The notes: generated by a model from the letters alone, not told the origin. Positions 20,165 through 42,789 are shown, counted from the first letter of the stretch. The stretch: 64,000 bases of DNA from IMGVR_UViG_3300044796_000657:186001-250000, one strand, 5' to 3'. Numbers and translations: made by a program.

Positions 20165-20587
20165 ATGAACATGAGTTTTAGAGAATTCGTTAACCCCGGT
20201 GCTTTTCAAGATACTTCAAAAGTCGGAATCGATAATCACTTTTTTGGTATTGGTAAAAGTGACCTTCCAACCCCCACACTTGACTTGCCTACCAAAACTA
20301 TAGCAAGCAAAGTTCGCCGCATTAACTATACCGAAAATCCCATTTCTATCAACTTACAAGACGGTACGACTTGGAACGTAACAAAGAAACAGTGGGATTA
20401 TCTAGTAGCCATCGGCAAGACACCCAAAGTCAACAGTAGCATCCAAATAGAAATGTATCTGGATGGTACCATCAAATCGCTAGATGTATTTGGTGGTGAT
20501 CCGGGGCGAAGTCAACCAGCACCCCTAGCCCAACAAAGCGGAAAACCCGGCGTCAAAAACGTCAATCCTAAACGTGGCCCCTTTTAA
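20165..20587 (+). CDS. hypothetical protein (candidate internal virion protein)
   Basis: TAAATA-N4-ATG; N-terminal SFREF motif. Confidence 0.6.
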
Positions 20588-21588
20588 CGTTCACAACTTT
20601 CATAAAACGTCTTCATGTTTGGCGTGAGATTTTCCTTCTCCCACTCATAAAGATCATCCACCAATTTCTTGTACGCCAATTCCACATCATCAGGATTGAC
20701 AACATCGGCTACAACTTCAATGTTCATATCGCCCGTTCTACCAGACTGCGGATTAGCAAAACCCTTACCAGCAACCTTAAGCAAAGTTCCAGATTTTGTC
20801 AGAGGAGCAATGTTAACTTCAATAGTGCCATTAAGCGTAGGAACGGCCAATTTACCGCCCTTAACTAAAACGGAATATTGAACCGGAACCTTACAGAACA
20901 AATCATCCTTATGCCGCATAAACCTTTCATGCGGATTGACACGAACACTCACAAACAAACTACCTGCCTGTTTACCGAATGTATTACCGCCTCCAATGAC
21001 CCTCATGGTCATTTGATCTTGGGTACCCTTGGGGAAATCCACTGTCATTGGACTTTCTGACCGATGGTAACCTTTGCCTGAGCATGGCTTACATTCTTTG
21101 ACTGATCGTTTTCCTGTACCCTTACAATTTGTGCAAGGCATCGTAATGGTCATGTTGCCTTGCCGTTGATTTCTTCTTCCTTGACCAGCACAAAATAAGC
21201 ACGTTTGAGACTCGGCAGAACCACTTCCCTTACAATCGCTACATTCTGTCATTTTTGGCACATTCAATGTCTTAGTGCATCCATCAGCAGCTTCCCAGAA
21301 ATCCAAAGGTGTTTCCATATGGATGTCGTATTGGGTATTCTGTCTTTGGTGTCCAAAATTGAACATTTGTGAAAAAACATCACTGAACAAGTCCTGATAA
21401 TCCCCTTGATCAGAGGGGTTAGTCAAAGATTCATAAGCATTTGTAATTTCTTTGAACTTAATTTCTGCTTCAGGATCGCCCGGATTCCTATCGGGGTGAT
21501 ACTGCATGGCGAGTTTGCGGTACGCTTTTTTGACTTCGTCTTCGGAAGCACTTGCATTAATACCTAAAATTTCATACGGATTTTTCAT
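20584..21588 (-). CDS. dnaJ: DnaJ chaperone
   Basis: J-domain HPD, four CxxCxGxG repeats, C-terminal domain. Confidence 0.95.
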
Positions 21589-21799
21589 TCAGCACCACGT
21601 AAGATGTATAGCCTTCTTGAACAGTCATTTCACCCATTGTTGGCGCAACGTTGTGTGGCCAATCTTCACCCTTTTTGCGAAACGTTAACACTAACTCGCC
21701 ATCGCTATTTTTGACGATGCCGCATTCGGTTCCTTCAACTAGCAGAACCTTAACTTTATGCCAAATATTTTCATGTAATTCAATATTTTCATTGTCCAT
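21572..21799 (-). CDS. hypothetical protein
   Basis: 75-aa coupled ORF with GGAG SD. Confidence 0.55.
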
Positions 21800-22718
21800 G
21801 ATAACTCTCCACGTGTTTAATACTCTTGGTTTCTGACTCCATCAAAATAGAATGTGTTACAATATGCTTACCATCTATTCTGACCCCACGCAACAAGCTT
21901 CCGTTAGTGATGCCTGTTGCCGCAAACATAACCCGACCTTTAGCCAAATCTTCTTTGTCATACACCTTGTCATCCACTGGCTTATAGTTCTTGTCGTCTA
22001 CCAATCTGCCGATGAACTCACCGCCCAAGCACTTCAACGCTGCGGCTGTAATGACGCCCTCTGGGGCACCACCTACGCCAATAAACAAATCAATACCGGA
22101 TTGAGGCATCGCTACAGCAATTGCGCCACTAACATCACAATCCTGAATGAAGCGTATTCGACAGCCGAGACTCCGCATTTTACCAGCCAAAGCTTCATGC
22201 CTTGGTCGATCTAACATACAAACAGTCAATTGCGCTTTGCCAGTGCGATACTTAACTTTCTCCACTAACGAGGGGTAGCTATCTTCAAAGTTGACATGTA
22301 AATCCGCTGCTGCATATTTGGATGCTGCTACAGCTATTTTTTCCATGTAAAACTCTTCGATTGGCATTAGGTTTCCCTTTTCTCCAATTGCAATCACCGA
22401 CATCGCCTCATAACCACCCTTGGCCGTCGGAGTTGTACCTTCAACTGGATCAACAGCAATTTCATAAGTGTTCATGGTTTTTTGCAGTAATTCAGCGTAT
22501 TTTCCAACTTGTTCACCCTTATACAATCCTACCGAACCATCCTTAATGCCTTCGCCTATAACAATTTCTGCCCCAAAAATAATGTTGTTGAGTCTTTTTC
22601 GCATGGCATCGGTTGCCACTTGATCAATTTTAATCTTATCGCCCGATCCCACCAGCCTCGAAGCAGCAACAGCCGCCGCTTCAGTAGCTTCAACGATTTC
22701 AAACAATAAATGCTTCAT
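21789..22718 (-). CDS. glpX: fructose-1,6-bisphosphatase class II
   Basis: TEAAA, IGEG..D, AVDPVEGT, YMEK, LDRPRH, D.DV, GGAPEGV..AAA, FAATGIT.G.LL.GV. Confidence 0.95.
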   Translation of the reverse strand: MKHLLFEIVEATEAAAVAASRLVGSGDKIKIDQVATDAMRKRLNNIIFGAEIVIGEGIKDGSVGLYKGEQVGKYAELLQKTMNTYEIAVDPVEGTTPTAKGGYEAMSVIAIGEKGNLMPIEEFYMEKIAVAASKYAAADLHVNFEDSYPSLVEKVKYRTGKAQLTVCMLDRPRHEALAGKMRSLGCRIRFIQDCDVSGAIAVAMPQSGIDLFIGVGGAPEGVITAAALKCLGGEFIGRLVDDKNYKPVDDKVYDKEDLAKGRVMFAATGITNGSLLRGVRIDGKHIVTHSILMESETKSIKHVESYHGQ

Positions 22719-27143: not shown

Positions 27144-28010
27144 TCAAGGTTTTCTGTAGGCAGACACGATTTGATTGGGTCGCCACGGTTTACGAAGAAA
27201 AACACTACCTAAAACAAATGCATCCGCACCGTTTTTTTCACGAATACGAACGTCTTCAATCGTCATGATGCCCCCACCACTCATGATGGGAGCCTTGACA
27301 CCAGCGGCCTTAACTTTTTGAAGTGCTTCAATAGCAAAGTTTCGGATAGGCTCGCCGGAAACACCACCAACCAACTTAAACTTGTTCAACGGACTCTTTT
27401 TGCCGGGGAACACTAAGGGGAAAGGTACTGTGTTAATGAGTTCGAAGGCCGAAACCGTCCCGTCCAACTCTTTACATATACTAACATAATCATCCGCAAA
27501 AGACAACTTCACTATTACTGGATGTGAAGTATTTTTTTCAACGGCGGCAATAGTTTCGCAAATAAACTCCACTGCGTTAGAACGTGTGACATTCGGGCAA
27601 CTCACATTGACTTGAATGCCCTTAATGCCAACACATTTATCAAGCTGTTGAGCCATCGTTACTGCTTCTTCTACCGACTTTGGCATGATGGAAACCAGAA
27701 CGTTATATCCCTTATCCATCACCAATTTGTACTTAGCATCAATCCACCATTTAAGGCCGGGATTTGTCAAACCAATGGCATTGACCGCCCCGCCGGGAAT
27801 GAGTTGTACGCATCGCCACGGACACCACATATTCAGATTACCAACAGTTGGTTCCAATGTCAAGGTCTTTGTGATGATAGTTAATTTAGTAGGGTCAATA
27901 ATACCCAACCACCTTAACGGATGTTCCCACCACCAACCTTGTCCATCGAATGCCAAAGCACCAGATGCGCAAGCGAAATCAATCTTGTGTCCGTTTGATA
28001 ATTCAATCAT
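27144..28010 (-). CDS. pyrD: dihydroorotate dehydrogenase (family 1)
   Basis: ASG, KTLT..P..GN, NAIGLTNPG, NVSCPN, VKLS, INT, GGVSG, GGI. Confidence 0.9.
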   Translation of the reverse strand: MIELSNGHKIDFACASGALAFDGQGWWWEHPLRWLGIIDPTKLTIITKTLTLEPTVGNLNMWCPWRCVQLIPGGAVNAIGLTNPGLKWWIDAKYKLVMDKGYNVLVSIMPKSVEEAVTMAQQLDKCVGIKGIQVNVSCPNVTRSNAVEFICETIAAVEKNTSHPVIVKLSFADDYVSICKELDGTVSAFELINTVPFPLVFPGKKSPLNKFKLVGGVSGEPIRNFAIEALQKVKAAGVKAPIMSGGGIMTIEDVRIREKNGADAFVLGSVFLRKPWRPNQIVSAYRKP

Positions 28011-28657
28011 TAGTAATCCCAACTTGACGATAAGTAAGAACTCGATACACGTGAACTTGAACATTTCAAAGTGCTAAATGTGTACGATTCCCGCTTCTTG
28101 ATAATATCTTGATAGCACTTTGAGGTAAAATGCTTTTGCAAAAGATTAACAAATAAAAGCACACTTGGTTCAGTCGTTGTGCATTCAACCAATTCGGGTG
28201 CACTTTGACTTCGCTTCTTACACTCACCACGAATTACGTACATTCTTGCCTTTAAAGCCATTCTTTGATAACGAGGATCACCACCGGGGACATTGTCAAC
28301 AGCCGCATGAGCACCCTTGTATGTAGAAAAAGAAAAGCCCGGAAAGACCCATGCGTGACCTTCGCTGCTTTTGAAGACAGCGTAGCCCAAAAGCTTCTTT
28401 TTGAGATAGTTAATAGTTAACTCAAAATCTTCTTGACTATCACAATCAATCATCGGAATTGTTCGTCCGCCGATTTGACACTGAATTATCAAAAAATGGT
28501 TTTCAGGTTTTCTACCAGAAACAGTGCGATAAAAACTACGAAGAGCATCGTCGCCAACGCCTATAAGGGACAATGAGCGTCCATTTGTATATTCGTTGGC
28601 GAAACGATACTCATCGTGGAAAATCAATTCCTTGTTTTCATTTAACCAATACTTCAT
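28010..28657 (-). CDS. hypothetical protein
   Basis: 215-aa coupled ORF; IDCD and SSEGH motifs. Confidence 0.6.
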   Translation of the reverse strand: MKYWLNENKELIFHDEYRFANEYTNGRSLSLIGVGDDALRSFYRTVSGRKPENHFLIIQCQIGGRTIPMIDCDSQEDFELTINYLKKKLLGYAVFKSSEGHAWVFPGFSFSTYKGAHAAVDNVPGGDPRYQRMALKARMYVIRGECKKRSQSAPELVECTTTEPSVLLFVNLLQKHFTSKCYQDIIKKRESYTFSTLKCSSSRVSSSYLSSSWDY

Positions 28658-28663
28658 GTCGCC

Positions 28664-29347
28664 TCACTTGGCCGCTTTGCGGAGGGGGAGTTTGGATTTG
28701 GGATCGAACTTGGCTCGCAGTTGTTCGTACAACAATTTTTGCTGTGGTTCGGGCATCGGATCGAAAGTCTTCTTGAGTCGCAGGAACAAAGCTGCCTTGC
28801 GAAGAGCGACCTGTTCGGGCGACTTGTGGAAGAGATCGGGGCAAATCGCCTTGAAAAGCAACTTGCGATCTTCCCGACTGAGCATGTAGTACTTCTTGGC
28901 CGCACCGAACAAACTACCGGCTTCCAAGCCCGTACCTTTCGCCGCTTTCATGGCGACTTGTTCCGCTTTGCGATGGGCGCCTTCGTTGTCTTGTGCGATG
29001 ATGCCGAGCAAAGCGAACCGACGGCCTTCACTCTTGCTGAATACGTCGTTAACGTGGCACTTGACCGTATGCGTCAACTCGCCGGTCGGCAAGGTGATAC
29101 GGATGGTCGTACTGTGTTGTACGACTTCTTTGGCGGGCATCATAACAGGAACCATGACAGGCTTCCCATCTTTGCCCGTTTCACCGCTGGCAGTCATCAC
29201 AGGTTCGCCGGGAGCATAGGTGATTTTGTTACCGGTGCGAATTTGCTTGCCCGGCAACAGCAAGGGCTTGTCTGCGCCCAGCTTAACCTGTTTGGTTTCG
29301 TGTTTCACGCCAACAAGGGCGTCACCACCTGAAAGTTTGATCTTCAT
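28664..29347 (-). CDS. hypothetical basic protein (likely early, highly expressed)
   Basis: GC-rich codons, AAGGA SD, C...D.F.K..GR..AL motif. Confidence 0.7.
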   Translation of the reverse strand: MKIKLSGGDALVGVKHETKQVKLGADKPLLLPGKQIRTGNKITYAPGEPVMTASGETGKDGKPVMVPVMMPAKEVVQHSTTIRITLPTGELTHTVKCHVNDVFSKSEGRRFALLGIIAQDNEGAHRKAEQVAMKAAKGTGLEAGSLFGAAKKYYMLSREDRKLLFKAICPDLFHKSPEQVALRKAALFLRLKKTFDPMPEPQQKLLYEQLRAKFDPKSKLPLRKAAK

Positions 29348-29391
29348 TGCCCATTTCCTTGTGGAACGATTGAAGGTGAGTAACTCTCGAC

Positions 29392-29420
29392 AATATACCA
29401 GCTTTCACAATGAAACGCAA
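29392..29420 (-). promoter_or_regulatory. sigma70-type promoter
   Basis: TTGCGT-17 nt-TATATT upstream of 29347 gene. Confidence 0.55.
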
Positions 29421-29430
29421 TACATATTTT

Positions 29431-30150
29431 ATGCCATGCAACAAAAATCACACAAATTGTAAATTTGATTCGTACGGAATGGGCATCATGCCTGAGTGCT
29501 GTAAGAGCCACTTAATTGAAACAATATTCTACACGACTTGGCTACTCAATCTTTACGAAATTAAACATTGGGCTGATTATGGAACGCTTTTAGGTGCTGT
29601 TAGGGGTGGGGGATTTATCCCTTGGGATTCTGATGGGGATTTCGGCGTTATGGCAAGCAGCAAAAATCAAATACTGAGCTTGGAGCAAAAAATCAAACGG
29701 GATGGATTTCATTTACATGTCTCTAGCAAAAACGTTATTCAAATAGTTTATAGCAAAAACAATTGGTCATATGTTGAATTGTGGTTAAATAGATTAGACA
29801 GCGCAAGAACTTATAAGGTCAAAAAAGTCAGCAATGAAATGCCGCCCCATTATTCACCTATTGATCTATCTCCTATTCGTAATCAATCATTGATATGCAA
29901 ATCAGGCGGGCCGGGGACTCAATGGGATCATACTTCGGATTTTCCATATTGGTTCGTAGAAGAAACAGATAAAGTTAAGTTTGAAGGAAAATATCTGCCT
30001 TCGCCAAAAATGCCAGAACACTTTTTGGATATGCGGTTTGGGCACTGGCAAGACCCTGTACGAAAATCGGTAGCGTATTTCGGGGGCAATGCCCTATCCA
30101 TGAGAGAAAGCCTCAAAAAAGTCAATCAATTGAAATCAATGCGAGGATAA
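29431..30150 (+). CDS. LicD family phosphotransferase
   Basis: W.DYGTLLGAVR.GGFIPWD.D.D; FEG...P.P...FL..RFG.W..P. Confidence 0.9.
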   Translation: MPCNKNHTNCKFDSYGMGIMPECCKSHLIETIFYTTWLLNLYEIKHWADYGTLLGAVRGGGFIPWDSDGDFGVMASSKNQILSLEQKIKRDGFHLHVSSKNVIQIVYSKNNWSYVELWLNRLDSARTYKVKKVSNEMPPHYSPIDLSPIRNQSLICKSGGPGTQWDHTSDFPYWFVEETDKVKFEGKYLPSPKMPEHFLDMRFGHWQDPVRKSVAYFGGNALSMRESLKKVNQLKSMRG

Positions 30151-30800
30151 ACGTAATTGATGGCATATTCCAATTGTTCTTGATCGTCAATTTCTGTAAA
30201 AACGCCCGGAGCATTGAGAATGAAAAACTTATCACCCAAAGTTTCATAAGCATAATCATAATGCTCTTTTGGATTCTTTTTCAAAATGCAATACGACTTA
30301 ACAATAAGACGAGCAAATGTATCGGCGCTCAATTTAGAAATGCCTACAGCAATATTCTGATTAGGCGGCAATTTCTTTGACATATGAATCAAATTGCCGT
30401 CAGAATCCACTTCGGCAAATACGGCATCTTTAGGATCGCCCTTACCAAACAAAACAACATTAGGAGCAGGGCATTCAATAATAGCATCAAGCATGATCGG
30501 ATCGTAGAGAATGTCCGATTCCAGAATCAAAACATCACTCCTAATATCACCCATTTGTCTCAAAGTATGAAGACTGCCAGTTGTTTCATAAACATCATTT
30601 TGTCTGGTTTCAAATCCGAGAGCTTGATAATAACGAGCACCATATCCCGTTCCAATAATGGGACAAATCCCCCTTTTCAATAATGCTTTAATAGAATAAG
30701 AAATCAATGAATTGCCATAAAGGTTAATAAAACCTTTAGGCCGATTCAGATTCAAACGACTACCTGTTCCAGCAGCCAAAATAAGTGCATGTTTAACCAT
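30126..30800 (-). CDS. LicC/PntC-like (phosphocholine/phosphonate) cytidylyltransferase
   Basis: ILAAG.GSRL...PK, GY, N..Y.TTGS, LESDILY, EIDD. Confidence 0.85.
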   Translation of the reverse strand: MVKHALILAAGTGSRLNLNRPKGFINLYGNSLISYSIKALLKRGICPIIGTGYGARYYQALGFETRQNDVYETTGSLHTLRQMGDIRSDVLILESDILYDPIMLDAIIECPAPNVVLFGKGDPKDAVFAEVDSDGNLIHMSKKLPPNQNIAVGISKLSADTFARLIVKSYCILKKNPKEHYDYAYETLGDKFFILNAPGVFTEIDDQEQLEYAINYVYPRIDFN

Positions 30801-31698
30801 TGGCGATTTTTCTCAATATCGTATTCAATTCATGATACACATGATTACTAGAATAATTGAAACAACTGATTTGAATACAATCTTTCATGTATGTTTCATT
30901 TTGATAAACAAAGAATCCTTCATTGGCCAAAGCATCCTTAACATTCAACCTCAACGTCACCACTGGTGATATGCTTTCATTGACAATATACTTCTCTAAG
31001 CCTTTAGTTAAAGTTTCAGCATTCAATGAAACCATTGCTCTGAATTTATCTAAATCAAAAATTTTCAATGATTGCAAAAGAGAGAAAAACTGAGGCATCA
31101 AAGATGTGTGCGGTGTTTCACCTTTTTTGGCATACTCAATATACTTAGACAGATTGAGATAATCGGAGCGACAAAACAAAGCAGGAAGATCATTATAAAG
31201 CACAATGCCCATCGCAGGCAAGCCGGATAATTGTTTAGAAGAACTGACAATTAGAAAATCTGCTTGTGGAATCGGATAATACGGAAAAGCAGAAACCGCA
31301 TCAACAATTAACTTACCATCAAATTTGAAATTAGTCAAATCATTATAATAACTGTTACTTGTCTCAAACTGAACAACGAAACAAACATCACGCTTTTCCA
31401 CCTTGGCTAAATCGTCATAAATCTTAACATTCTTGCTGTAATAAGAAGCTGTAATTGCTGCTCGACGACCAAATTCGCCATTAACGACAACGGCAACCGT
31501 TGTATCTTCGGCAAGTGTTGAAGATAAGACGGTTTCTACGGCGGAAGATGCACTTCCTTGCGTAAAAATCACATTTTTATAACCCGATAAATTCAAGAGA
31601 AGCAATGCCGTTTGCTTATAAACATCACGAAATTCATCACTTCTGTGGCTGAATTCTATCGTCTCACTTGGTACCGGGCCGGGGGATAGGAGTTTCAT
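30793..31698 (-). CDS. class V PLP enzyme (2-aminoethylphosphonate transaminase-like)
   Basis: LSPGP, SHRS.EF, NGEFG.R, ETS...N, VDAVS.F, SSSK..GLP (PLP Lys). Confidence 0.8.
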   Translation of the reverse strand: MKLLSPGPVPSETIEFSHRSDEFRDVYKQTALLLLNLSGYKNVIFTQGSASSAVETVLSSTLAEDTTVAVVVNGEFGRRAAITASYYSKNVKIYDDLAKVEKRDVCFVVQFETSNSYYNDLTNFKFDGKLIVDAVSAFPYYPIPQADFLIVSSSKQLSGLPAMGIVLYNDLPALFCRSDYLNLSKYIEYAKKGETPHTSLMPQFFSLLQSLKIFDLDKFRAMVSLNAETLTKGLEKYIVNESISPVVTLRLNVKDALANEGFFVYQNETYMKDCIQISCFNYSSNHVYHELNTILRKIANG

Positions 31699-32378
31699 TT
31701 GGATAGACGTACATTGAACCTATAAGGGTAACATGGCAACGGATGAGGCATAATATCTAATCTCAACCCCGATTTCTTGGCATAATCCTCAAAAAACTCA
31801 TGACTCAAATAAAGATGATCGAGTCCTGCATACAGTACGTCATAATCCTTGCCGACATTTTCACGCCTCGTTTTTTCCGCTAATGGCTTCTTCAATTCAT
31901 CGTTAATGTCAACAATTCCAACAATCTTATTAGCTTTGGCAACCATGACATCAAGCACTTGCGTTGCGTATTCCTTACTAGGAAAATACACACAGCAACC
32001 TACTGCCAGTACAACATCATATTTGGGTTCAGTAGGAATTGCTATCGCTTCGACTGCTGAAAGGTCGTCAGACTTAATGATTTGTTTGGCGTGTTCAATC
32101 AGTGCTTCGCAATAATCGGCACCACCAACGCTCTTGGCTATATCTTGGATGTTGTACAAGAAAGAACCAGCACCACAACCAATTTCAAAAACAGACTTCG
32201 TATCGTCTATTTCATAGGTCATAATGATGGATTTGATAAAATTTAACCAAGCTGCTAAGTCGGTTTTAGCAACTTTCGATTCGTATCCGCTGGCAGTGAA
32301 TAAGGCTTGTAATAAACTAGCTGGTGGCAAAGATAGACTCTTGCCCCGCCTGTCCCATACTTCTTTCCACTTGTTCAT
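31695..32378 (-). CDS. class I SAM-dependent methyltransferase (N-MTase-like)
   Basis: VFEIGCGAG, G.D, YDVV, VYFPS.EY. Confidence 0.85.
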   Translation of the reverse strand: MNKWKEVWDRRGKSLSLPPASLLQALFTASGYESKVAKTDLAAWLNFIKSIIMTYEIDDTKSVFEIGCGAGSFLYNIQDIAKSVGGADYCEALIEHAKQIIKSDDLSAVEAIAIPTEPKYDVVLAVGCCVYFPSKEYATQVLDVMVAKANKIVGIVDINDELKKPLAEKTRRENVGKDYDVLYAGLDHLYLSHEFFEDYAKKSGLRLDIMPHPLPCYPYRFNVRLSK

Positions 32379-32733
32379 ATACTTCTTTCGCAAAGTTGTC
32401 TTGGCATTTTTTGTTATAAGCTAGAATCGTTTCAAGGGAATTTCCTAATATTTCGCCAAAATCATCTTTAGTGACTTCGACTCCTCTAATACGTGCTCTT
32501 TGTTCTTCAGCAGAACGAAAGCCACTTTCCTTTAACATATCGACAGCTTCGTCAAATATATCTTCAGGAAAAATTTCCATGCCATGTTCTTGGAATTTTT
32601 TCAAACACCTCTTAGCTGCTGGCTCCATGAAAGCCTGTAATAAGGTTTGAATAGATGTGCTGATTACTGGCCCTTCTAGTAAAACGTCCTTTTCGTCTTC
32701 CGGGCCGTAAAATGATAATCTGTATATAGACAT
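32317..32733 (-). CDS. hypothetical protein
   Basis: GGAGG SD, 138 aa. Confidence 0.6.
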   Translation of the reverse strand: MSIYRLSFYGPEDEKDVLLEGPVISTSIQTLLQAFMEPAAKRCLKKFQEHGMEIFPEDIFDEAVDMLKESGFRSAEEQRARIRGVEVTKDDFGEILGNSLETILAYNKKCQDNFAKEVYEQVERSMGQAGQESIFATS

Positions 32734-32759
32734 AAAAAACCTCCCCGTTGAAGGGAGGT
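32734..32759 (-). terminator. hairpin/terminator overlapping SD of next gene
   Basis: ACCTCCC-TTCAACG-GGGAGGT-TTTTT directly before ATG 32733. Confidence 0.5.
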
Positions 32760-32784
32760 CACCAAAGGAAAATGAATGTCAAAA

Positions 32785-33663
32785 TTAGAATAGCGATCTT
32801 TCAGCAAGAAACCCTGCCGATTGAGCATGTCCACCACCACCATGATGTAAAGCTATTTTAGAAACATCAACACCCTTTTTATTGGAACGCAATGAGTAGG
32901 AATACTTGCCATCCTCTCGCTGAAACCAAACAACACCAAAGGGTCTATTATCCGCCAACATACACCCAACATCCGAATTCATAACACTACTATTAACTGC
33001 TAAAACTCGGTAGCCATCCAATTCAACTTCTCTTGCATATCGCACCATGTCGGATGCCATCTGCTCTTGAAATCTCAAAATTGAACAACCTTCTTTTTTA
33101 ACATCACTCAACTTGCGATGAGATAATTCGTCCCAAGTTTCAAAATCAAATGGATAAGAAGAAATGACAGCGTTAACACATCTCGTATCTGCCAATTCGT
33201 GTTTGCCCAAGTCTCTATCTTGGACATATTGTACCAGCCAAGGCATTGAGCCATCAAAAGATCGGTCACTTTGACGACAATTATTGAAGTAGCACCAAGT
33301 CATCCCACTACCGCTTTTGTTCATATTGAAATAACAATATGGCAAACCGGCAAGATCGGCTTCGGCAGTGATATGGTGATCCAAAACAGTTAATGTTTTA
33401 GATTGTTCGTACATAGATTGTAAAATCTTGCGTTTGTACGAAAAGTCCAAAATGTAAGTTTCACGGCCTTTTGTATCTGGCGGTGATTCCCCAAATTGAG
33501 CAAAGATGATGTTAGCATCTGGAAAAACCTTTTGGGCTACCCATGCCGCACAAAATCCATCTGTGCATCTACCGTGTGTTATCACGGTTACATTACTAGG
33601 AGGGTCTTCGGGTTCCGTAATAATGTCTTTGGGATTAGAAATCACAACTTCTAAAACGCTCAT
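32785..33663 (-). CDS. DHH/DHHA1 phosphoesterase (phage type)
   Basis: H..C.DGF.AA, ILDFS, LDHH, D.DL, SLRS, GGGGH..AG. Confidence 0.9.
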   Translation of the reverse strand: MSVLEVVISNPKDIITEPEDPPSNVTVITHGRCTDGFCAAWVAQKVFPDANIIFAQFGESPPDTKGRETYILDFSYKRKILQSMYEQSKTLTVLDHHITAEADLAGLPYCYFNMNKSGSGMTWCYFNNCRQSDRSFDGSMPWLVQYVQDRDLGKHELADTRCVNAVISSYPFDFETWDELSHRKLSDVKKEGCSILRFQEQMASDMVRYAREVELDGYRVLAVNSSVMNSDVGCMLADNRPFGVVWFQREDGKYSYSLRSNKKGVDVSKIALHHGGGGHAQSAGFLAERSLF

Positions 33664-34325
33664 AAACCTTTAGCGAACTGGTAAACAGCCCGCCCCTTAT
33701 GACGTTTAGCATCCCACTGATTTTCCAACGTAGCATAAAAGCCCGTTTCGGTAATCGGTGAATTCCCTTCAAGCGGTAAGCCCCACTTGCGGATAGCATA
33801 AACGTTAACACTCAAGTCTTTTTTGGGAATGTATTTTGCCAAAGGTGGCACATCTTTTACAACCATCGCATTGCCAGCAATCATTGCATATTGACCAATG
33901 GTCGTAAATTGATGCGTCACAGCCGCTACACCAACGGTAGCGCCTTCCATAACTCTTGTCCAACCGGACAATATCGTACCAATTGAGAGAACAGCTTTTT
34001 GCTCTACGATACAATCGTGAGCAATATGGCATCTTCCCATAATATACACATCATCCATCACCTCTGTCAATCCCGCTGTCGGGAGGGTGATAACACTTAA
34101 TTCTCTAATAATCACACGTTCGCCAATACGTACAATTCCCGTACATTCGTTTTGTTGTTCGTATTTCTCTGTACTATGCTCTGGCGGCTGTCCTATAATG
34201 ACATGCGTACCAACAATCGTATCATCACCAATCTCGCATTGAGAAATGGTTGAATAAGCACCAATTCTCACGTTTTTACCCAAACGCACAGTTTCCCAAT
34301 CAATGATAGCAGTTGGATGTATCAC
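33660..34325 (-). CDS. LpxA-like hexapeptide-repeat acyltransferase
   Basis: IHPTAII, hexapeptide repeats, IRE, HIAHDC, HQF..IG. Confidence 0.85.
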   Translation of the reverse strand: MIHPTAIIDWETVRLGKNVRIGAYSTISQCEIGDDTIVGTHVIIGQPPEHSTEKYEQQNECTGIVRIGERVIIRELSVITLPTAGLTEVMDDVYIMGRCHIAHDCIVEQKAVLSIGTILSGWTRVMEGATVGVAAVTHQFTTIGQYAMIAGNAMVVKDVPPLAKYIPKKDLSVNVYAIRKWGLPLEGNSPITETGFYATLENQWDAKRHKGRAVYQFAKGL

Positions 34326-34900
34326 AGCTTGCCTTCTGCTAAATCTTGGTACAATTTATTAGTTTTAGCCCAAGCGGTCGCATCACGATAGTGAATATTG
34401 AAGTGCTGAATTTGAAGATCGCAATGCTGACTCTTTTTGAAGTTAACGCATTGTTCGTGAACCCGACCTGAATACCTAACGTGTTTTCTCATCAACCGGT
34501 ACTGCGAGTCCCCGTTCGGACAAGGAACCCATTCACGGGTCATCTCTAAATCAAACCAGTGAAGTCTGGACATTGTCCAAGTGTCAACGCCTTGAGCATT
34601 ACCTTGGTGACATAAATCTCGCAATCGTGCAGCGTGTGCGGGCAACATAATTTCATCTGAGTCAATGGTCAAAAGCCACTGACTTTTGACACGATCTATT
34701 AACCCATTTCTCATACTGCCGAAATCGGTAAATTTGAATGTGAATGGATTATAACCAGCTTCACGTAGCCATTTTTCGGTGCCGTCATTGGTTTTATCAT
34801 CAATACCAATGACGTAATCATCAACATGACCCTTTATGCTCGCAAGACATTTTTTGAGTGGCTCTAATTCGTTACAAGTTAAAATACAAGCTGTTAGCAT
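34322..34900 (-). CDS. GT2 glycosyltransferase
   Basis: ACILT.NE, DFG..RN, WLL.IDSDE, GRVHE. Confidence 0.85.
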   Translation of the reverse strand: MLTACILTCNELEPLKKCLASIKGHVDDYVIGIDDKTNDGTEKWLREAGYNPFTFKFTDFGSMRNGLIDRVKSQWLLTIDSDEIMLPAHAARLRDLCHQGNAQGVDTWTMSRLHWFDLEMTREWVPCPNGDSQYRLMRKHVRYSGRVHEQCVNFKKSQHCDLQIQHFNIHYRDATAWAKTNKLYQDLAEGKL

Positions 34901-34908
34901 AAAATAAC

Positions 34909-35655
34909 TTAGTTAGTTCTCCTGTCATTCATAACAAAAAGCTTCCGATCACGCAAAGCTGTCGTATAAATATTTTCATCAGGAAGTTGTTCAATATCCA
35001 TTTCACAAGTCCAAGCAAATTCTTGAAGTGCCATGAAGTTTGGAATGAAAAAAGAACCCGCACCAACATGTTTAACGTATTGTTGGCCTCTGTATACAGT
35101 AGTGTGCCGTTCTGGTCTATCGCTGGCTACTTCTAAAATAGGCTTCTCAATGTTTATTCTAGTTAAGGGTGTTTCGATGAGAATTTGGCCACCCGGTGAC
35201 AGCAATTGGGTCATCTTTCTAAAATGACCCAATACATCTTCGGCGTGATATAAAACACCAAAATACAAAATTACATCATACTTTTTATCTTCGCCAAGAT
35301 TCAAAAAGTTATCAACTACAATGTCCAATTCAACGTTCCATTCAGCATTTGCCAAAAGGAGTCTATTCGGAAAATGGCCAATACACATTTCGAGGGGATT
35401 GATTGATGTGACAGACTTTGCGCCTGCGAGCATTGAACCTATTGAGAAAAACCCATCATTAGCACCAATATCTAAAACTTTTTTGTCTTTGACATTAACG
35501 CCAACTCGCCGAAATGCTTCCCACATTTTTTGTTCACGATTACGGTCATGATTAGCCCCCATAATCCTACTACCGTCTGGTAGTGGCATATTATGGAACC
35601 ACATGCCTTTATCAACAAGTTTTCCGTCCCAAGCATAATCAAAAAATGACTTCAT
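34909..35655 (-). CDS. class I SAM methyltransferase (CmoB/DUF1698-like)
   Basis: VLDIGANDGFFS, YDVILYFGVLYH, GG..LIET. Confidence 0.85.
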   Translation of the reverse strand: MKSFFDYAWDGKLVDKGMWFHNMPLPDGSRIMGANHDRNREQKMWEAFRRVGVNVKDKKVLDIGANDGFFSIGSMLAGAKSVTSINPLEMCIGHFPNRLLLANAEWNVELDIVVDNFLNLGEDKKYDVILYFGVLYHAEDVLGHFRKMTQLLSPGGQILIETPLTRINIEKPILEVASDRPERHTTVYRGQQYVKHVGAGSFFIPNFMALQEFAWTCEMDIEQLPDENIYTTALRDRKLFVMNDRRTN

Positions 35656-37466: not shown

Positions 37467-37991
37467 TCAATCTTTAGAAGTTTTAGGAACTAATCTTACG
37501 GAAAGCCTAGTACCTTCAAACTTTGGAGGTGATACGGTTGTACCAACATCTTGAATGGATGCTAAAATCTTATTCATGATAATGAAGCCACGATCTTTGT
37601 GCTGCATTTCACGACTTCTGAAAACGATGTTAACCGATACAGGATGCTTGTCATTCAAAAACTTCTTCAGTTGATTGATTTTGACTTCAACATCATTATC
37701 ACCGGAAACAGGTCGTAACCGAATTTCCTTCGGTGCGACATTCTTAGAATTGTTTTGTTGCTCTTTCTTCTTCTTCTTTTCTTCGTACTGAAATCGCTTG
37801 TAGTCCATGATTTCGCATACAGGTATGTCGCCAGCGGACACTTCCACTAGATCCATATCGTTAGACCACGCCAAGTCCCAAGCCTTGTACGTTGGCATGA
37901 TCCCTAAGTGTTCACCGTCTCGTTTTACCCGTACAGTGGGTGCGGTGATGTAGCGGTTTACCCGTGTCATCCGTTTGTTGAAAATCGTCAT
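37467..37991 (-). CDS. infC: translation initiation factor IF-3
   Basis: N..I.AP.VRV...G..LGIM, DLVEV, VC.IMDY..F.YE, KEIRLRP, FRSRE, PKFEG. Confidence 0.95.
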   Translation of the reverse strand: MTIFNKRMTRVNRYITAPTVRVKRDGEHLGIMPTYKAWDLAWSNDMDLVEVSAGDIPVCEIMDYKRFQYEEKKKKKEQQNNSKNVAPKEIRLRPVSGDNDVEVKINQLKKFLNDKHPVSVNIVFRSREMQHKDRGFIIMNKILASIQDVGTTVSPPKFEGTRLSVRLVPKTSKD

Positions 37992-38431: not shown

Positions 38432-40066
38432 TCAAACCTTCTTTGCTAGTTTGCTGAACATACGGCTCAGAGCGGGCGTAAAATCCCCACGCTCTATAAC
38501 GGTGTTAATGATGAACGGCTCTTTGCATACAAGGGCTTGCGACAAAGCAGCATCCAACTCATCTTCAGTAGTTGCCTTGGCACCCTTACCACCACCGACC
38601 AACAACGGCATATTTTCAAAATTCCAATTTTGGATGTCGTTGAATGAACCCTCCAAGAGAATTCTTTCGGTGCCATATCCACCATTGTTGAGAACGATCA
38701 CAATTGGATTCATCTTACGACGAACCAAAGTGCTGAATTCCTGTCCTGTCATTTGGAAGGCACCATCACCCACCAATACAATTGGCCGCATCTTTGGATT
38801 GGCCAATTGAGCACCTAACGCAGCAGGCACAGCAAATCCCATACTGGTATAGAATGCTGACGCCAAAAACTGATTGTGGCCGTGTACAGTGACATCCAAG
38901 GCACCGAACAAGCTATCACCAACATCAGCGATAACAGTCATATCTTCGGTCAAGATAGCGTTAACTTTCTCCATCAACCGGTCGGCCTTGAGAGTAACGC
39001 CGCACTTGGCTTCCCATTTTTCGGTATACGCCGGGCCGGGCATCTTGACGCTTTCACGCCGTTGGAATTTGTGCTTACACAATCCGTCAACGAAGTCGCC
39101 AAACTGCACGTTGGCATACGTGTGGTTTCTCACCTGCATGGTTTGACTGGTTGCGTTGATCGTATTGCGACGTTTGTGACGCAGTGGCAAGAATCCGAGA
39201 TTCATATCCGTCATCATCACGCCCAACATAATCACGCAATCGCTCTTGGCGAAGAAGTCAACCACTTCTGGACGACTTGTACTTTCGCTGTACACACCCA
39301 ACGACATTGGATGCCGCTCACCAATACACGACTTGCCCAAGATGTCCGTAGCGATTGGAATGCCGGTTTGTTCGGCAAATTTCATTAACTTTTGACCCAA
39401 ACCAAATCGGGCAACTTCAACGCCTGCCCAAATCACCGGGTTTTTGGCATTGGTGATCCAGTTAATCGTATCCGACAAAATTTCCTGTAGGTTCTCTTGA
39501 TCGGAAGATATATTGGAAGGAGTGCCTACTGTGTAAGCATCGTACGTAATTGGCTTTTCAACCATATCACGGGGTAACTCGATGTATACCGGTTGCTTGT
39601 AGTGTTTGGCTGCTTCGAGAACTCTGTCGATTTCAAAAGCCGCTCGACTTGGATCACGAAGTACCGTATTGGCACAAGTGATGTTCTCAAAAATTTCATG
39701 CTGGCATTCAAAACTGCGTACCATATGGTGAAGTAAAACGTCACCATTACGCTCTTTCATACCCGGTGATCCGGAAATCACGACCACAGGACTCTTTTCG
39801 GCGAATGCACCACCAATAGCATTGATAAGGCTAAATCCACCGACGCAATATGTCACACAAACCGCTGACATACCACCATTGTTAACACGGGCATAACCAT
39901 CAGCAGCAAAGCCAGCATTAGCTTCATTGGTAGTACCAACTAACTCTATGTTGCTCTTTTCAACGTACTTATTGAAAGCCAATGAATAGTCGCCGGGAAC
40001 ATTCAGCATGTGATTGACGCCGTTACTCTTTAACCGCTCAATCAAAAATTGGGCCACGTTAGGCAT
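38432..40066 (-). CDS. ThDP-dependent alpha-keto acid decarboxylase (pyruvate/indolepyruvate decarboxylase family)
   Basis: VPGDY, NEANAGFAADGYAR, AFAE..PV, LLHH, GDGAFQMT.QE...LNNGGYG.ER. Confidence 0.93.
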   Translation of the reverse strand: MPNVAQFLIERLKSNGVNHMLNVPGDYSLAFNKYVEKSNIELVGTTNEANAGFAADGYARVNNGGMSAVCVTYCVGGFSLINAIGGAFAEKSPVVVISGSPGMKERNGDVLLHHMVRSFECQHEIFENITCANTVLRDPSRAAFEIDRVLEAAKHYKQPVYIELPRDMVEKPITYDAYTVGTPSNISSDQENLQEILSDTINWITNAKNPVIWAGVEVARFGLGQKLMKFAEQTGIPIATDILGKSCIGERHPMSLGVYSESTSRPEVVDFFAKSDCVIMLGVMMTDMNLGFLPLRHKRRNTINATSQTMQVRNHTYANVQFGDFVDGLCKHKFQRRESVKMPGPAYTEKWEAKCGVTLKADRLMEKVNAILTEDMTVIADVGDSLFGALDVTVHGHNQFLASAFYTSMGFAVPAALGAQLANPKMRPIVLVGDGAFQMTGQEFSTLVRRKMNPIVIVLNNGGYGTERILLEGSFNDIQNWNFENMPLLVGGGKGAKATTEDELDAALSQALVCKEPFIINTVIERGDFTPALSRMFSKLAKKV

Positions 40067-40933: not shown

Positions 40934-41491
40934 TTATTTAGGTGTCCATATATCCTTTTCAAACAAACCTTTTTCTTCCATCCAATTAACTCGCTCTTTT
41001 ACCCAAAGCAAAGAACCAGTAAATTTTTCAACTACAATACCAGCTCGTTTAGCAATGTCTTCACCGTAACGAAAATGGTTTTTGTCAACCATCTTCAATG
41101 CTAATGGCCCCCAAACCACCCGCTTGATGCCCTTGTCGGCAATCTCCAACATACATCGCATACAAGGATGGCCCGTCACATACATCGTACAACCTTCTAA
41201 TCCATTGATAGAAATCGCACGTGAATGTCTGATGGCATTCTCTTCGGCATGTTTGATATAAGGATACTTGCCTAAATCATCTGGATTTTTTGGATCGGGT
41301 CTTGACCAATCAATCTCTTTGTCATTGATAGCTCTAGGAATGCCGTTCATGCCAAAGCCCAAAGGCACATTATTGGCATCAATAACAGCAGCGCCGGTTT
41401 GACTATTTGGATCTTTGGAACGACCGGAATATTGATAAAGAAGCCCGATATAGAACGAATCCCAATCGGGCACTGAACGAGGTGGTGTCAT
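40934..41491 (-). CDS. dCMP deaminase
   Basis: WD, RSKDP..Q.GA, G.NG.P, KYPY..HAE.NAI, PC..C. Confidence 0.9.
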   Translation of the reverse strand: MTPPRSVPDWDSFYIGLLYQYSGRSKDPNSQTGAAVIDANNVPLGFGMNGIPRAINDKEIDWSRPDPKNPDDLGKYPYIKHAEENAIRHSRAISINGLEGCTMYVTGHPCMRCMLEIADKGIKRVVWGPLALKMVDKNHFRYGEDIAKRAGIVVEKFTGSLLWVKERVNWMEEKGLFEKDIWTPK

Positions 41492-42438: not shown

Positions 42439-42453
42439 TGTGTTCTCTAAAAA

Positions 42454-42789
42454 TTAACATTCGTCAAATTTGTACTTGCCATCTTTGATAGCAATCAAAG
42501 TGTCGACATCGTAATCATCCGTAGCTTTTTTTTCGGCTTTTGTCAAAGACTGAATTCGGTTTAGCAAATATCGCAATCTAGCATTGGAGCAGACTAGGCC
42601 GGTGTGATCTACGAATTGGTCACAATAATCACCGTTACTGAGTATACCAACCATATGACCAAATTCAAGGTAGTATTTGGCGAAACAGGCCGGAAGTTCC
42701 GTACGAAAGTAATGAGACAGATAAGATAATTCCGATGAAAATTTAGGACTCATGAAATCGCCACGAATTATTTTAGCATCATCTGTCAT
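42454..42789 (-). CDS. hypothetical protein
   Basis: ATGA-coupled to RNA ligase. Confidence 0.55.
   Translation of the reverse strand: MTDDAKIIRGDFMSPKFSSELSYLSHYFRTELPACFAKYYLEFGHMVGILSNGDYCDQFVDHTGLVCSNARLRYLLNRIQSLTKAEKKATDDYDVDTLIAIKDGKYKFDEC

What the first reader, a model, noticed from the sequence alone, without database searches (positions are those of the whole stretch)
29431..32378. Phage four-gene cassette for de novo phosphocholine or N-methyl-aminoethylphosphonate decoration
Seen: three translationally overlapping genes (SAM methyltransferase, class V PLP enzyme, LicC/PntC-like cytidylyltransferase) converge on and overlap a LicD gene. The MTase has VYFPSKEY, resembling N-methyltransferase domains. 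Established: LicC makes CDP-choline and LicD transfers phosphocholine to glycans; PntC + AEP transaminase activate 2-aminoethylphosphonate; some fold-type I PLP enzymes (CobD type) decarboxylate O-phospho-amino acids. Inference: either phosphoserine -> phosphoethanolamine -> N-methylation -> CDP-choline -> glycan (no choline kinase LicA needed), or the phosphonate equivalent. Either would modify virion or host-surface glycans, which is a rarely described viral capability.
Basis: partly seen in the sequence, partly recalled or inferred. Interest (0 to 1): 0.75.

Follow-up and report, generated by a model that had tools for sequence, protein, structure and literature searches.

The report
Phage phospho-amine glycan-tailoring gene cassette
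A 430-kb peat phage carries four tightly packed genes that most likely make a small, methylated, CDP-activated amino-alcohol phosphate and attach it to a sugar chain. It looks like a phosphate-ester copy of the bacterial pathway that decorates cell surfaces with aminoethylphosphonate, and I found almost nothing like it in other viruses.

Summary
The methyltransferase (31695-32378), the class-V PLP enzyme (30793-31698) and the cytidylyltransferase (30126-30800) overlap by 4 and 8 nt on the minus strand. They converge on, and overlap by 25 nt, a LicD gene (29431-30150).

- **Conservation.** The same four genes recur in a related phage contig.
- **PLP enzyme and NTase.** This pair is 44-50% identical to a bacterial operon of PLP, NTase, methyltransferase and a TagF-like transferase.
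- **NTase.** It is a long-branched offshoot of PntC, the AEP cytidylyltransferase.
- **Methyltransferase.** It is a full-length homolog of methyltransferases that sit between ppd and pntC in true pepM clusters.
- **No phosphonate source.** PepM, Ppd and choline kinase are absent from the 430-kb phage. PepM is also absent from all 7 bacterial loci of this type and from two genomes that carry the operon. By contrast, 29 of 34 PntC loci have it.
- **PLP family.** It is small (about 35 clusters). It keeps the phosphate-binding SHR motif of phosphoserine aminotransferase but has an invariant Gln where AEPT and SerC have the carboxylate-binding Arg. It is often fused to a HAD phosphatase.

Best reading: one PLP enzyme replaces PepM, Ppd and AEPT, probably converting phosphoserine to phosphoethanolamine (or DHAP to serinol-phosphate). 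The steps would then be N-methylation, CDP activation and LicD transfer. The chemistry is inferred, not shown. I rate the phosphonate reading disfavoured.

The parts
29431..30150 (+). LicD-family phosphotransferase (239 aa from the ATG at 29431; an alternative ATG lies at 29410). Proposed last step: transfer of the phospho-amine head group from its CDP conjugate to a glycan acceptor.
   Evidence: PF04991 5e-12, above cut-off. FKRP (6kaj) 1e-10, with PWDSDGD aligned to the catalytic PWDYDVD and CC aligned to the FKRP Zn-loop CC. It is the only LicD in the 430-kb genome. 75% identical to the convergent LicD of L003.
30126..30800 (-). PntC-related nucleotidyl(cytidylyl)transferase, 224 aa. Proposed step: CTP plus phospho-amine gives the CDP conjugate.
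   Evidence: NTP_transf_3/IspD. Tde1415 PntC domain 1e-22 over residues 1-221, against LicC at 0.01. 44-50% identical to NTases of the bacterial PLP-NTase operons. In the tree it groups with those at 100/100 support on a 0.99 branch, apart from all PepM-linked PntC. E94 (Tde E104) and D182 (position of Tde E196; LicC has Asp there) are invariant.
30793..31698 (-). PLP enzyme of a small, uncharacterised class-V-fold family (here called A1), 301 aa. Proposed step: it makes the phospho-amine in one reaction from a central metabolite.
   Evidence: Fold. PLP Lys155 and Asp133. TIGR03301 PhnW-AepZ scores 71.6 bits, far below the 360.8 cut-off. FSHRSxEF aligns to SerC VSHRGKEF. Invariant Gln276 aligns with the Arg of PhnW CFRIG, AEPT FRIAN and SerC MRASI. 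The family has about 35 clusters at 50% identity among 1.84 billion representatives.
31695..32378 (-). Class I SAM methyltransferase, 227 aa, of the family found next to pntC in pepM clusters. Proposed step: N-methylation of the aminoalkyl phosphate or its CDP conjugate.
   Evidence: Methyltransf_11/12/25. Full-length homologs at 30-35% identity, E 1e-27 to 7e-38, lie immediately upstream of PntC in L062, L113, L106, L085 and L108. The best genome-wide hit in operon-bearing genome G002 is the operon's own MTase.
32317..32733 (-). 138-aa ORF of unknown function. It is first in the probable transcription unit and overlaps the MTase start by 62 nt.
   Evidence: No Pfam, PHROG or NCBIfam hit. Conserved in L003 at 64% identity in the same position. 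Whether it belongs to the pathway is not shown.
32738..32760 (-). Terminator-like hairpin (9 bp stem, 5 G-C pairs, T-run) in the 51-nt gap between the DHH phosphoesterase gene and the 138-aa ORF. It probably marks the upstream boundary of the cassette's transcription unit.
   Evidence: Consensus scan. This is a pattern match only.
32785..35655 (-). Upstream co-directional genes: DHH phosphoesterase (32785-33663), LpxA-like hexapeptide acyltransferase (33660-34325), GT2 glycosyltransferase (34322-34900) and a second SAM methyltransferase (34909-35655). They are glycan-related context and are not shown to belong to the cassette.
   Evidence: Syntenic in L003.

Best explanation
The cassette is a phosphate-ester counterpart of the bacterial phosphonyl-tailoring (Pnt) and Lic pathways.

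Proposed steps:
1. One PLP enzyme of a new class-V-fold family makes a small phospho-amine from a central metabolite. It takes the place that PepM, Ppd and AEP transaminase occupy in Pnt clusters. The likeliest reaction is decarboxylation of O-phosphoserine to phosphoethanolamine.
2. A Pnt-type SAM methyltransferase methylates the amine; the number of methyl groups is unknown.
3. A PntC-derived cytidylyltransferase makes the CDP conjugate.
4. The LicD-family enzyme transfers the phospho-(N-methyl)ethanolamine or phosphocholine head group to a glycan. The acceptor could be host surface polysaccharide, or a glycan built by the phage's own glycosyltransferases.

Shown: gene identities, tight coupling, co-conservation, the evolutionary relationships, and the absence of PepM, Ppd and choline kinase.
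Inferred: every chemical step, the order of methylation and activation, the acceptor, and the benefit to the phage. Receptor masking or superinfection exclusion, or virion glycan decoration, are guesses.
For: 1. Tight coupling of the three minus-strand genes and convergent overlap with LicD.
2. The four genes are conserved in phage contig L003.
3. The PLP and NTase are 44-50% identical to an adjacent pair in 7 bacterial contigs, always next to a TagF-like CDP-alditol phosphotransferase and usually an MTase.
4. The NTase is a PntC relative. In the tree its clade separates at 100/100 on a long branch from the PepM-linked PntC.
5. The PepM motif is present in 29 of 34 PntC-type loci of 12 kb or more. 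It is present in 0 of 7 A1-type bacterial loci, 0 in L003 and 0 in the whole 430-kb phage. Family searches found no true PepM in the phage or in operon-bearing genomes G001 and G002; the only hits there are methylisocitrate-lyase-like proteins with EDQ..KRCGH.
6. The PLP family keeps the H-R pair that binds the phosphate of phosphoserine in PSAT. It has an invariant Gln where AEPT and SerC have the alpha-carboxylate Arg.
7. About a third of the family's clusters carry an N-terminal HAD-phosphatase domain with motif DFDGV. This points to a phosphate-ester substrate or product.
8. The phage MTase is a full-length homolog of MTases inserted between ppd and pntC-AEPT in verified pepM clusters. The MTase therefore acts on an AEP-like aminoethyl head group.
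9. There is no choline kinase in the genome.
10. A peat metatranscriptome holds 100%-identical contigs across the cassette. This is weak evidence because DNA carry-over is not excluded.
Against: - No enzymology was done. To my knowledge no class-V-fold decarboxylase is known, so the family prior favours a transaminase.
- The loss of Arg is compatible with other chemistries.
- In viruses, the PLP family is otherwise found next to QueC in preQ0 clusters. Its product must also make sense in that setting.
- TagF-like partners normally use CDP-alditols, which fits serinol-phosphate better than PEtn.
- The MTase could be an O-methyltransferase. Structure and profile searches are not specific.
- The MAGs used to test for PepM have unknown completeness.
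- The host of the phage is unknown and might supply phosphonoacetaldehyde.
Confidence: 0.45

Rival explanations
1. Serinol-phosphate variant. The PLP enzyme is a dihydroxyacetone-phosphate aminotransferase that makes serinol phosphate (2-amino-2-deoxyglycerol phosphate). This is N-methylated, activated as CDP-serinol and transferred by LicD (TagF-like enzymes in the bacteria). It would be an amino analogue of the GpsA-TagD-TagF CDP-glycerol route.
For: - The fold and all nearest solved relatives are aminotransferases.
- DHAP is 3-phosphohydroxypyruvate with the carboxylate replaced by CH2OH. That matches retention of the phosphate-binding H-R motif together with an Arg-to-Gln change at the carboxylate site.
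- The bacterial partners are TagF-like CDP-alditol transferases.
- The closest solved LicD relative, FKRP, uses a CDP-alditol.
- FemAB-like genes in some operons could acylate a free amine.
Against: - An aminotransferase still has to bind the alpha-carboxylate of its amino-acid donor, and the Arg that does this is invariably missing.
- The NTase and the MTase both descend from enzymes that handle the linear 2-aminoethyl head group of AEP.
Confidence: 0.2
2. True phosphonate decoration. The PLP enzyme transaminates host-made phosphonoacetaldehyde to AEP. The MTase makes N-methyl-AEP, the NTase makes CMP-(N-methyl)AEP, and LicD attaches it. The phage depends on a PepM/Ppd-positive host.
For: - The best solved matches of both the NTase and the PLP enzyme are the two domains of the PntC-AEPT fusion Tde1415.
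- The best NCBIfam hit for the PLP enzyme is PhnW-AepZ.
- The MTase's closest relatives lie inside pepM-ppd-pntC operons.
- LicD-like genes occur in such clusters.
Against: - No PepM or Ppd in the 97%-complete 430-kb phage record.
- None in 7 homologous bacterial loci or in 2 operon-bearing genomes, against 29 of 34 for genuine PntC loci.
- The Arg conserved in every AEPT and PhnW sequence examined is an invariant Gln here.
- The PhnW-AepZ score is a fifth of the family cut-off.
- HAD-phosphatase fusions and the QueC context of the PLP family are unrelated to phosphonates.
- The NTase clade sits on a long separate branch.
Confidence: 0.15
3. The genes are linked, but the product or the target is something else. 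Possibilities include a methyl-phosphoramidate-like or other phospho head group, a lipid, a virion protein or a nucleic-acid acceptor. Alternatively the PLP enzyme only supplies nitrogen, as it may do for QueC in other phages.
For: - The PLP family's main viral context is FolE-PLP-QueC, not glycan genes.
- The PntC/LicC superfamily also contains Cj1416 of the O-methyl-phosphoramidate pathway, which also uses SAM methyltransferases. The alignment set in PMC6697681 includes it; the pathway details are from my own knowledge.
- The LicD acceptor cannot be read from sequence.
Against: - There is no glutamine kinase or amidohydrolase partner.
- The bacterial operons sit with TagF-like, FemAB-like, Mur-ligase and sulfatase-family envelope genes.
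- The phage has GT2, Glf and LpxA-like glycan genes nearby.
Confidence: 0.1

Closest known systems
Phosphonyl-tailoring (Pnt) pathway: PepM-Ppd-AEPT-PntC plus LicD-like transferase (Rice et al. 2019, PMC6697681)
   Same: - Cytidylyl activation of a 2-aminoethyl-P head group by a PntC-type NTase.
- A class-V PLP enzyme partnered with the NTase (fused in Tde1415).
- LicD-like or TagF-like transferases.
- The phage MTase family occurs inside such clusters.
   Different: - No PepM or Ppd anywhere.
- The PLP enzyme belongs to another subfamily: SHR motif, Arg replaced by Gln, about 300 aa.
- The NTase forms a separate long-branched clade.
- Gene order is PLP then NTase, unfused.
Lic pathway for phosphocholine decoration (LicB/LicA/LicC/LicD)
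   Same: The logic of a CDP-activated head group transferred by a LicD-family enzyme to a glycan.
   Different: - No choline kinase or transporter.
- The NTase matches LicC only weakly, E 0.01 over about 76 residues.
- The head group would be made de novo by a PLP enzyme and an MTase rather than scavenged.
Phosphoserine aminotransferase (SerC/PSAT) and archaeal class-V PSAT-like enzymes (PH1308, 2dr1)
   Same: Class-V fold, PLP lysine, and the S-H-R-(S/G)-x-E-F motif whose His-Arg binds the substrate phosphate in PSAT.
   Different: - The alpha-carboxylate Arg (AtPSAT1 R403) is an invariant Gln.
- The second His-Arg phosphate loop is not conserved.
- Scores are far below the family cut-offs.
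Campylobacter jejuni capsule enzymes Cj1436 (phosphoserine decarboxylase), Cj1437 (DHAP transaminase to serinol-P), Cj1438 amidoligase and Cj1435 phosphatase.
   Same: The chemical logic is the same: a single PLP enzyme makes PEtn or serinol-P from a central metabolite for surface-glycan tailoring. The PLP + ATP-dependent ligase + HAD phosphatase trio resembles the viral PLP(-HAD)-QueC arrangement.
   Different: Those PLP enzymes belong to the HisC/CobD-like aminotransferase class, not class V. Their product is amide-linked, not CDP-activated.
Phosphoethanolamine N-methyltransferases (PMT) of plants, Plasmodium and nematodes
   Same: SAM-dependent class I fold. The proposed reaction is the same, methylation of PEtn toward phosphocholine.
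   Different: - No specific relationship was found.
- Single-sequence E is 0.8-0.96.
- Profile hits cover only the SAM-binding core.
- Foldseek ranks PfPMT 33-37 at TM 0.55-0.59, among generic methyltransferases.

Membership tests
LicD family (PF04991) | Pfam model match above the gathering score | tested here: met
   46.8 bits against 22.6, although only the N-terminal 48 residues of the model align. Confirmed in the genome-wide scan.
LicD family (PF04991) | Acidic D-x-D-x-D metal/CDP-binding motif, as in the FKRP catalytic domain | tested here: met
   PWDSDGD aligns to PWDYDVD of 6kaj. The role of the FKRP residues is from my own knowledge.
LicD family (PF04991) | Transfers a phospho-alcohol from a CDP or CMP conjugate to a glycan | not testable with these tools
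   Needs an enzyme assay.
PntC (AEP cytidylyltransferase) | Full-length homology to a characterised PntC | tested here: met
   Tde1415 residues 1-238, E 1e-22, 84 bits.
PntC (AEP cytidylyltransferase) | Genomic linkage to pepM (ppm) and ppd | tested here: not met
   No PepM or Ppd in the phage. 0 of 7 homologous bacterial loci have the motif, against 29 of 34 PntC loci.
PntC (AEP cytidylyltransferase) | Amine-contacting Glu104 and Glu196 of Tde-PntC | tested here: inconclusive
   Glu104 is kept (LESD, E94). Glu196 is an invariant Asp (D182), as in LicD-partner LicC D192.
PntC (AEP cytidylyltransferase) | Groups within PepM-linked PntC in a phylogeny | tested here: not met
   It forms a separate group with the other PepM-less NTases, 100/100 support, stem 0.99. 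The tree is unrooted.
LicC (CTP:phosphocholine cytidylyltransferase) | Specific homology to LicC and linkage to licA/licB | tested here: not met
   1jyk E 0.01 over residues 5-80 only. No choline kinase in the genome.
AEP transaminase (PhnW/AEPT) | Class-V fold with the PLP lysine | tested here: met
AEP transaminase (PhnW/AEPT) | Score above the curated family cut-off | tested here: not met
   TIGR03301 71.6 against 360.8; TIGR02326 45 against 400.8.
AEP transaminase (PhnW/AEPT) | Conserved Arg of the C-terminal F-R-I-(G/A) strand | tested here: not met
   Invariant Gln276 in all 35 family members.
Phosphoserine aminotransferase (SerC) | His-Arg phosphate-binding motif | tested here: met
   FSHRSDEF aligns to VSHRGKEF. 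The role of these residues comes from AtPSAT1 H110/R111.
Phosphoserine aminotransferase (SerC) | Alpha-carboxylate Arg (AtPSAT1 R403, E. coli MRASI) and a family-level score | tested here: not met
   Gln at that column. serC_1 scores 32 bits against 443.6.
Phosphoethanolamine N-methyltransferase (PMT) | Specific sequence or structural similarity beyond the SAM-binding core | tested here: not met
Uncharacterised MTase family adjacent to pntC in pepM clusters | End-to-end homology with shared motifs (W4, W44, GCGxG, YFPS, D157, D160, R171, H188) | tested here: met
   30-35% identity over 227-231 aa, E 1e-27 to 7e-38. Alignment A4. Context verified by Pfam in L062.

The most novel reading that the evidence does not exclude
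The A1 PLP family is the first class-V-fold O-phosphoserine decarboxylase, or otherwise a carboxylate-independent maker of phospho-amines. That would give bacteria and this phage a kinase-free, choline-independent de novo route to CDP-(N-methyl)ethanolamine or CDP-choline for surface-glycan decoration. In dozens of other phages the same enzyme, often fused to a HAD phosphatase and translationally coupled to QueC, would supply an amino-alcohol that QueC ligates to 7-carboxy-7-deazaguanine. The product would be an undescribed N-substituted 7-amido-7-deazaguanine DNA base.
Probability: 0.25. Interest if true: 0.85.

Novelty: new variant of a known kind. Interest (0 to 1): 0.68.

Why it matters
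If the reading is right, it matters in four ways.
1. A one-enzyme replacement of PepM, Ppd and AEPT turns the phosphonate-tailoring pathway into a phosphate-ester pathway. That would be a clean example of pathway evolution by module swap.
2. It gives a candidate de novo bacterial and viral route to phospho-(methyl)ethanolamine or phosphocholine that needs neither choline uptake nor a kinase.
3. It would be a very rare case of a virus carrying a complete head-group tailoring cassette. Searches found no NTase relative in 2.9 million IMG/VR contigs or in 50,697 GenBank phage records. Such a cassette could remodel the host surface or virion glycans and so affect adsorption, superinfection exclusion or immune recognition.
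4. The related methyltransferases inside pepM clusters are candidates for the unknown N-methyltransferase that makes N-methyl-AEP, a compound common in nature.

The PLP family is small, uncharacterised and directly testable in vitro.

Tried and rejected
- **ThDP enzyme at 38432-40066 as a phosphonopyruvate decarboxylase: rejected.** It has three domains and 544 aa. Its best match is indolepyruvate/phenylpyruvate decarboxylase, 4.5e-116. It is unrelated to the ThDP fusion near the bacterial operon. True Ppd in pnt loci is a two-domain protein of about 376 aa.
- **Link to the phage DNA-hypermodification PLP decarboxylases (ViI gp226, M6 gp52): rejected.** Those are modelled on the tryptophan-synthase-beta fold, not class V. 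tblastn found no such phage hits.
- **PMT membership of the MTase: not supported**. The protein-atlas search gave only generic class I methyltransferases.
- **PepM-family hits in genomes G001 and G002.** They turned out to be methylisocitrate-lyase-like (EDQ..KRCGH, no EDKx5NS).
- **Co-folding of the PLP enzyme with the NTase.** The tool gave no answer, score 0.00. This is not evidence either way.
- **DNA-level search of the cassette against GenBank phages:** no match.
- **Protein-pattern scans of IMG/VR with the PLP enzyme alone and with the NTase alignment:** no NTase-type relatives.
- **High-identity LicD hits (45-48%) in pnt loci.** These were short motif-only alignments. Long alignments are 22-28% identical, so LicD gives no substrate clue.
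- **Literature searches.** Searches for a phosphoserine decarboxylase, an AEP N-methyltransferase or phage-encoded pnt/lic cassettes found nothing relevant.


Full report
**What the window is.** The window is bases 186001-250000 of a single 430,229-bp IMG/VR virus record. CheckV estimates it 97% complete, and IMG/VR labels it 'provirus'. The PLP protein's own contig is listed as 614 kb. The record encodes a large terminase, a phage-type DNA polymerase and other PHROG families, and IF3, RNA ligase and dCMP deaminase. It comes from a peat metagenome. I treat it as a jumbo phage.

**The observation.** The ORF list and the junction sequences confirm the layout exactly.
- MTase: 31695-32378 (-).
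- PLP enzyme: 30793-31698 (-). Its start overlaps the MTase stop as ATGA.
- NTase: 30126-30800 (-). Its start overlaps the PLP stop as ATGGTTAA.
- LicD: 29431-30150 (+). It converges on the NTase with a 25-nt overlap.

A 138-aa ORF of unknown function (32317-32733) precedes the MTase. It follows a terminator-like hairpin at 32760-32738. The likely transcription unit is therefore orf138-MTase-PLP-NTase, with LicD transcribed towards it. Further upstream on the same strand lie a DHH phosphoesterase, an LpxA-like acyltransferase, a GT2 and a second MTase.

**Identities.**
- LicD passes the Pfam cut-off. It aligns to the catalytic domain of FKRP, including the acidic PWDxDxD motif.
- The NTase matches the PntC domain of Treponema denticola Tde1415 over its whole length (E 1e-22). 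It matches pneumococcal LicC only marginally (E 0.01).
- The PLP enzyme has no Pfam hit above threshold. Its alignment-based AlphaFold model (pLDDT 93) is a class-V aminotransferase fold. AEPT, PhnW, AGT-type and SerC structures are its best matches, and K155 aligns with the PLP lysine.
- The MTase is a class I SAM enzyme.

A related phage contig (L003) has the same genes in the same order across more than 12 kb, at 64-86% protein identity. The PLP-NTase pair has 44-50% identical orthologs that are adjacent, often overlapping, in seven independent bacterial contigs. These include Obscuribacterales/Melainabacteria MAGs. The pair always lies next to a TagF-like (Glyphos_transf) phosphotransferase and usually next to a small MTase. 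Some loci also carry a FemAB-like gene and a sulfatase-family protein of about 530 aa. The genes are therefore a functional unit, and in bacteria that unit belongs to cell-envelope polymer synthesis.

**Phosphonate or phosphate?** A metagenome scan with the NTase alignment returned 80 loci.
- The relatives at 31-40% identity are genuine PntC. Of the loci of 12 kb or more, 29 of 34 carry the PepM signature EDKx5NS 1.5-3.5 kb upstream.
- Two of these loci were verified by Pfam as PepM-Ppd-(MTase)-PntC/AEPT, one of them with TagF-like and LicD genes.
- By contrast, the motif is absent from all seven A1-type bacterial loci, from L003 and from the whole phage genome.
- HMM searches found no PepM (PF13714, TIGR02320), no Ppd-type enzyme and no choline kinase in the phage.
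- They found no true PepM in two roughly 4.5-Mb genomes that carry the operon. The hits there have EDQ..KRCGH and are methylisocitrate-lyase-like.
- In a maximum-likelihood tree, the phage NTase, L003 and the six bacterial PepM-less NTases form one group with 100/100 support on a long stem (0.99 substitutions per site). That group is apart from all PepM-linked PntC.

**The PLP enzyme is not an AEP transaminase.** Its family (alignment A1) is small. In an exhaustive profile search of 1.84 billion representatives, about 35 clusters score above 240 bits before a clear drop.
- All 35 aligned members keep S17-H18-R19 (FSHRSxEF), and this aligns to VSHRGKEF of E. coli SerC. In Arabidopsis PSAT1 the corresponding H110/R111 bind the phosphate of phosphoserine, while R403 binds its carboxylate.
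- At the R403 position, A1 has an invariant Gln276. That position is CFRIG in PhnW, FRIAN in three AEPT domains taken from real pnt clusters, and MRASI in SerC.
- Scores against the PhnW and SerC family models are 5-20% of the curated cut-offs.
- About eleven of the A1 clusters carry an N-terminal domain of roughly 120 aa with the HAD-phosphatase signature DFDGV...VTAR...K...IDD.

Together these features point to a substrate or product that is a phosphate ester and is not held by an alpha-carboxylate in the usual aminotransferase manner.

**The methyltransferase.** The phage MTase aligns end to end with MTases of about 230 aa that sit immediately upstream of PntC (30-35% identity, E down to 7e-38). 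In L062 and L113 these MTases lie between ppd and the pntC-AEPT fusion. Its similarity to the MTases of the A1-type bacterial operons is weaker: 26-33% over about 160 aa. Even so, in genome G002 the operon MTase is the best genome-wide hit.

Neither profile nor structure searches tie the family specifically to phosphoethanolamine N-methyltransferases. From context, the family acts on an AEP-like aminoethyl head group. N-methylation is the natural guess because N-methyl-AEP is common in nature (PMC10590968), but it is not shown.

**Synthesis.** Pnt clusters consist of PepM, Ppd, AEPT, (MTase), PntC and a LicD-like or TagF-like transferase. The phage cassette and its bacterial relatives keep the NTase, the MTase and the transferase. 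They replace the three AEP-forming enzymes with one PLP enzyme.

That enzyme must therefore make an AEP-like phospho-amine in one step from a common metabolite. I see two candidates:
- **Decarboxylation of O-phosphoserine to phosphoethanolamine.** This is the oxygen analogue of AEP. Loss of the Arg that locks the carboxylate in the transaminase pose is what such a change would need.
- **Transamination of DHAP to serinol phosphate.** Here Arg-to-Gln matches the replacement of COO- by CH2OH, and TagF-like and FKRP-like partners use CDP-alditols. The missing Arg is awkward for binding the amino-acid donor.

I favour the first at 0.45 over the second at 0.20. I give the host-dependent phosphonate reading 0.15 and other chemistry or targets 0.10. 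The number of methyl groups, the order of methylation and activation, the acceptor and the benefit to the phage all remain inferred.

**Rarity in viruses.** The NTase has no relative in IMG/VR or in GenBank phages. LicD matches only two short fragments of doubtful origin and has no PHROG family. Apart from this phage, only L003 and one 5.4-kb contig carry close copies. PLP and NTase genes have 36.5-37% GC against 43% for the genome, which fits acquisition from a bacterium. Contigs from a peat metatranscriptome cover most of the cassette at 100% identity. That is compatible with expression, but DNA carry-over is not excluded.

**Limits.**
- No enzyme activity was or could be tested.
- The completeness of the MAGs is unknown.
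- The tree is unrooted.
- The co-folding job gave no answer.
- Statements about C. jejuni Cj1435-1438, the roles of the FKRP residues, the EDKx5NS signature and the lack of class-V decarboxylases rest on my own knowledge.

Noticed in passing
L023-L051 (IMG/VR), L005, L007, L016, L017, L018, L053: In other phages the same PLP family (27-46% identity) sits immediately upstream of QueC, usually overlapping it, inside preQ0 / 7-deazaguanine clusters (FolE, QueD, QueE, a PRTase). About 23 of 29 viral loci show this. In some it is fused to a HAD phosphatase, for example FolE-HAD/PLP-QueC in L053. The main paper on phage 7-deazaguanine clusters (PMC6884629) mentions no PLP enzyme. The enzyme may supply nitrogen or an amino-alcohol to QueC, which could mean an undescribed DNA base.
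   Followed up: partly
L062:9315-10007, L113:5595-6287, L106:285-959, L085:96-782, L108:9318-9977: A conserved MTase of about 230 aa lies between ppd and the pntC-AEPT fusion in true pepM clusters. It is a candidate for the uncharacterised N-methyltransferase that makes N-methyl-AEP.
   Followed up: partly
window 38432-40066 (-): A three-domain ThDP enzyme (544 aa) is most similar to indolepyruvate/phenylpyruvate decarboxylase (TIGR03394, 4.5e-116, below cut-off). It matches phrog_11199 and is 86% conserved in L003. A 2-keto-acid decarboxylase is an odd thing for a phage to carry. I found no link to the cassette.
   Followed up: partly
window 697-4121 (+): A second glycan-gene island of low GC (about 0.39): a GT2 glycosyltransferase, a 296-aa unknown, a sulfotransferase-like protein and UDP-galactopyranose mutase (Glf, 6e-69). 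The phage could build a galactofuranose-containing glycan of its own.
   Followed up: no
window 32785-35655 (-): A co-directional operon lies upstream of the cassette: a CmoB/Methyltransf_9-like MTase, a short GT2, an LpxA-like acyl-ACP:UDP-GlcNAc O-acyltransferase homolog (6e-35, below cut-off) and a DHH phosphoesterase (phrog_4771, 1e-70).
   Followed up: partly
window 20584-22718, 27144-28064, 10309-11385, 37467-37991, 40934-43769: Other host-like genes in the window: DnaJ, GlpX-type fructose-1,6-bisphosphatase (1e-96), a dihydroorotate-dehydrogenase-like protein, an amidoligase, IF3, dCMP deaminase and an RNA ligase.
   Followed up: no
L004/L008, L021, L022, L006: The bacterial PLP-NTase-MTase-TagF-like operons are flanked by a conserved 527-566-aa protein (a weak Sulfatase-family hit in L021). 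In some loci there are also a FemAB-like aminoacyl transferase and a Mur-ligase gene. This hints at an unknown amino-substituted, teichoic-acid-like polymer in Obscuribacterales-type bacteria.
   Followed up: no
window 28600-34500: A peat metatranscriptome run holds 73% of the sampled words of the cassette region and has 100%-identical contigs. The DNA run that is probably the source sample holds the whole stretch in one piece. No silent-region control was laid.
   Followed up: partly
whole record G000: IMG/VR classes the 430-kb record as a 'provirus'. The PLP protein's own contig is listed as 614 kb. I did not examine whether the extra 184 kb is host DNA or more phage.
   Followed up: no
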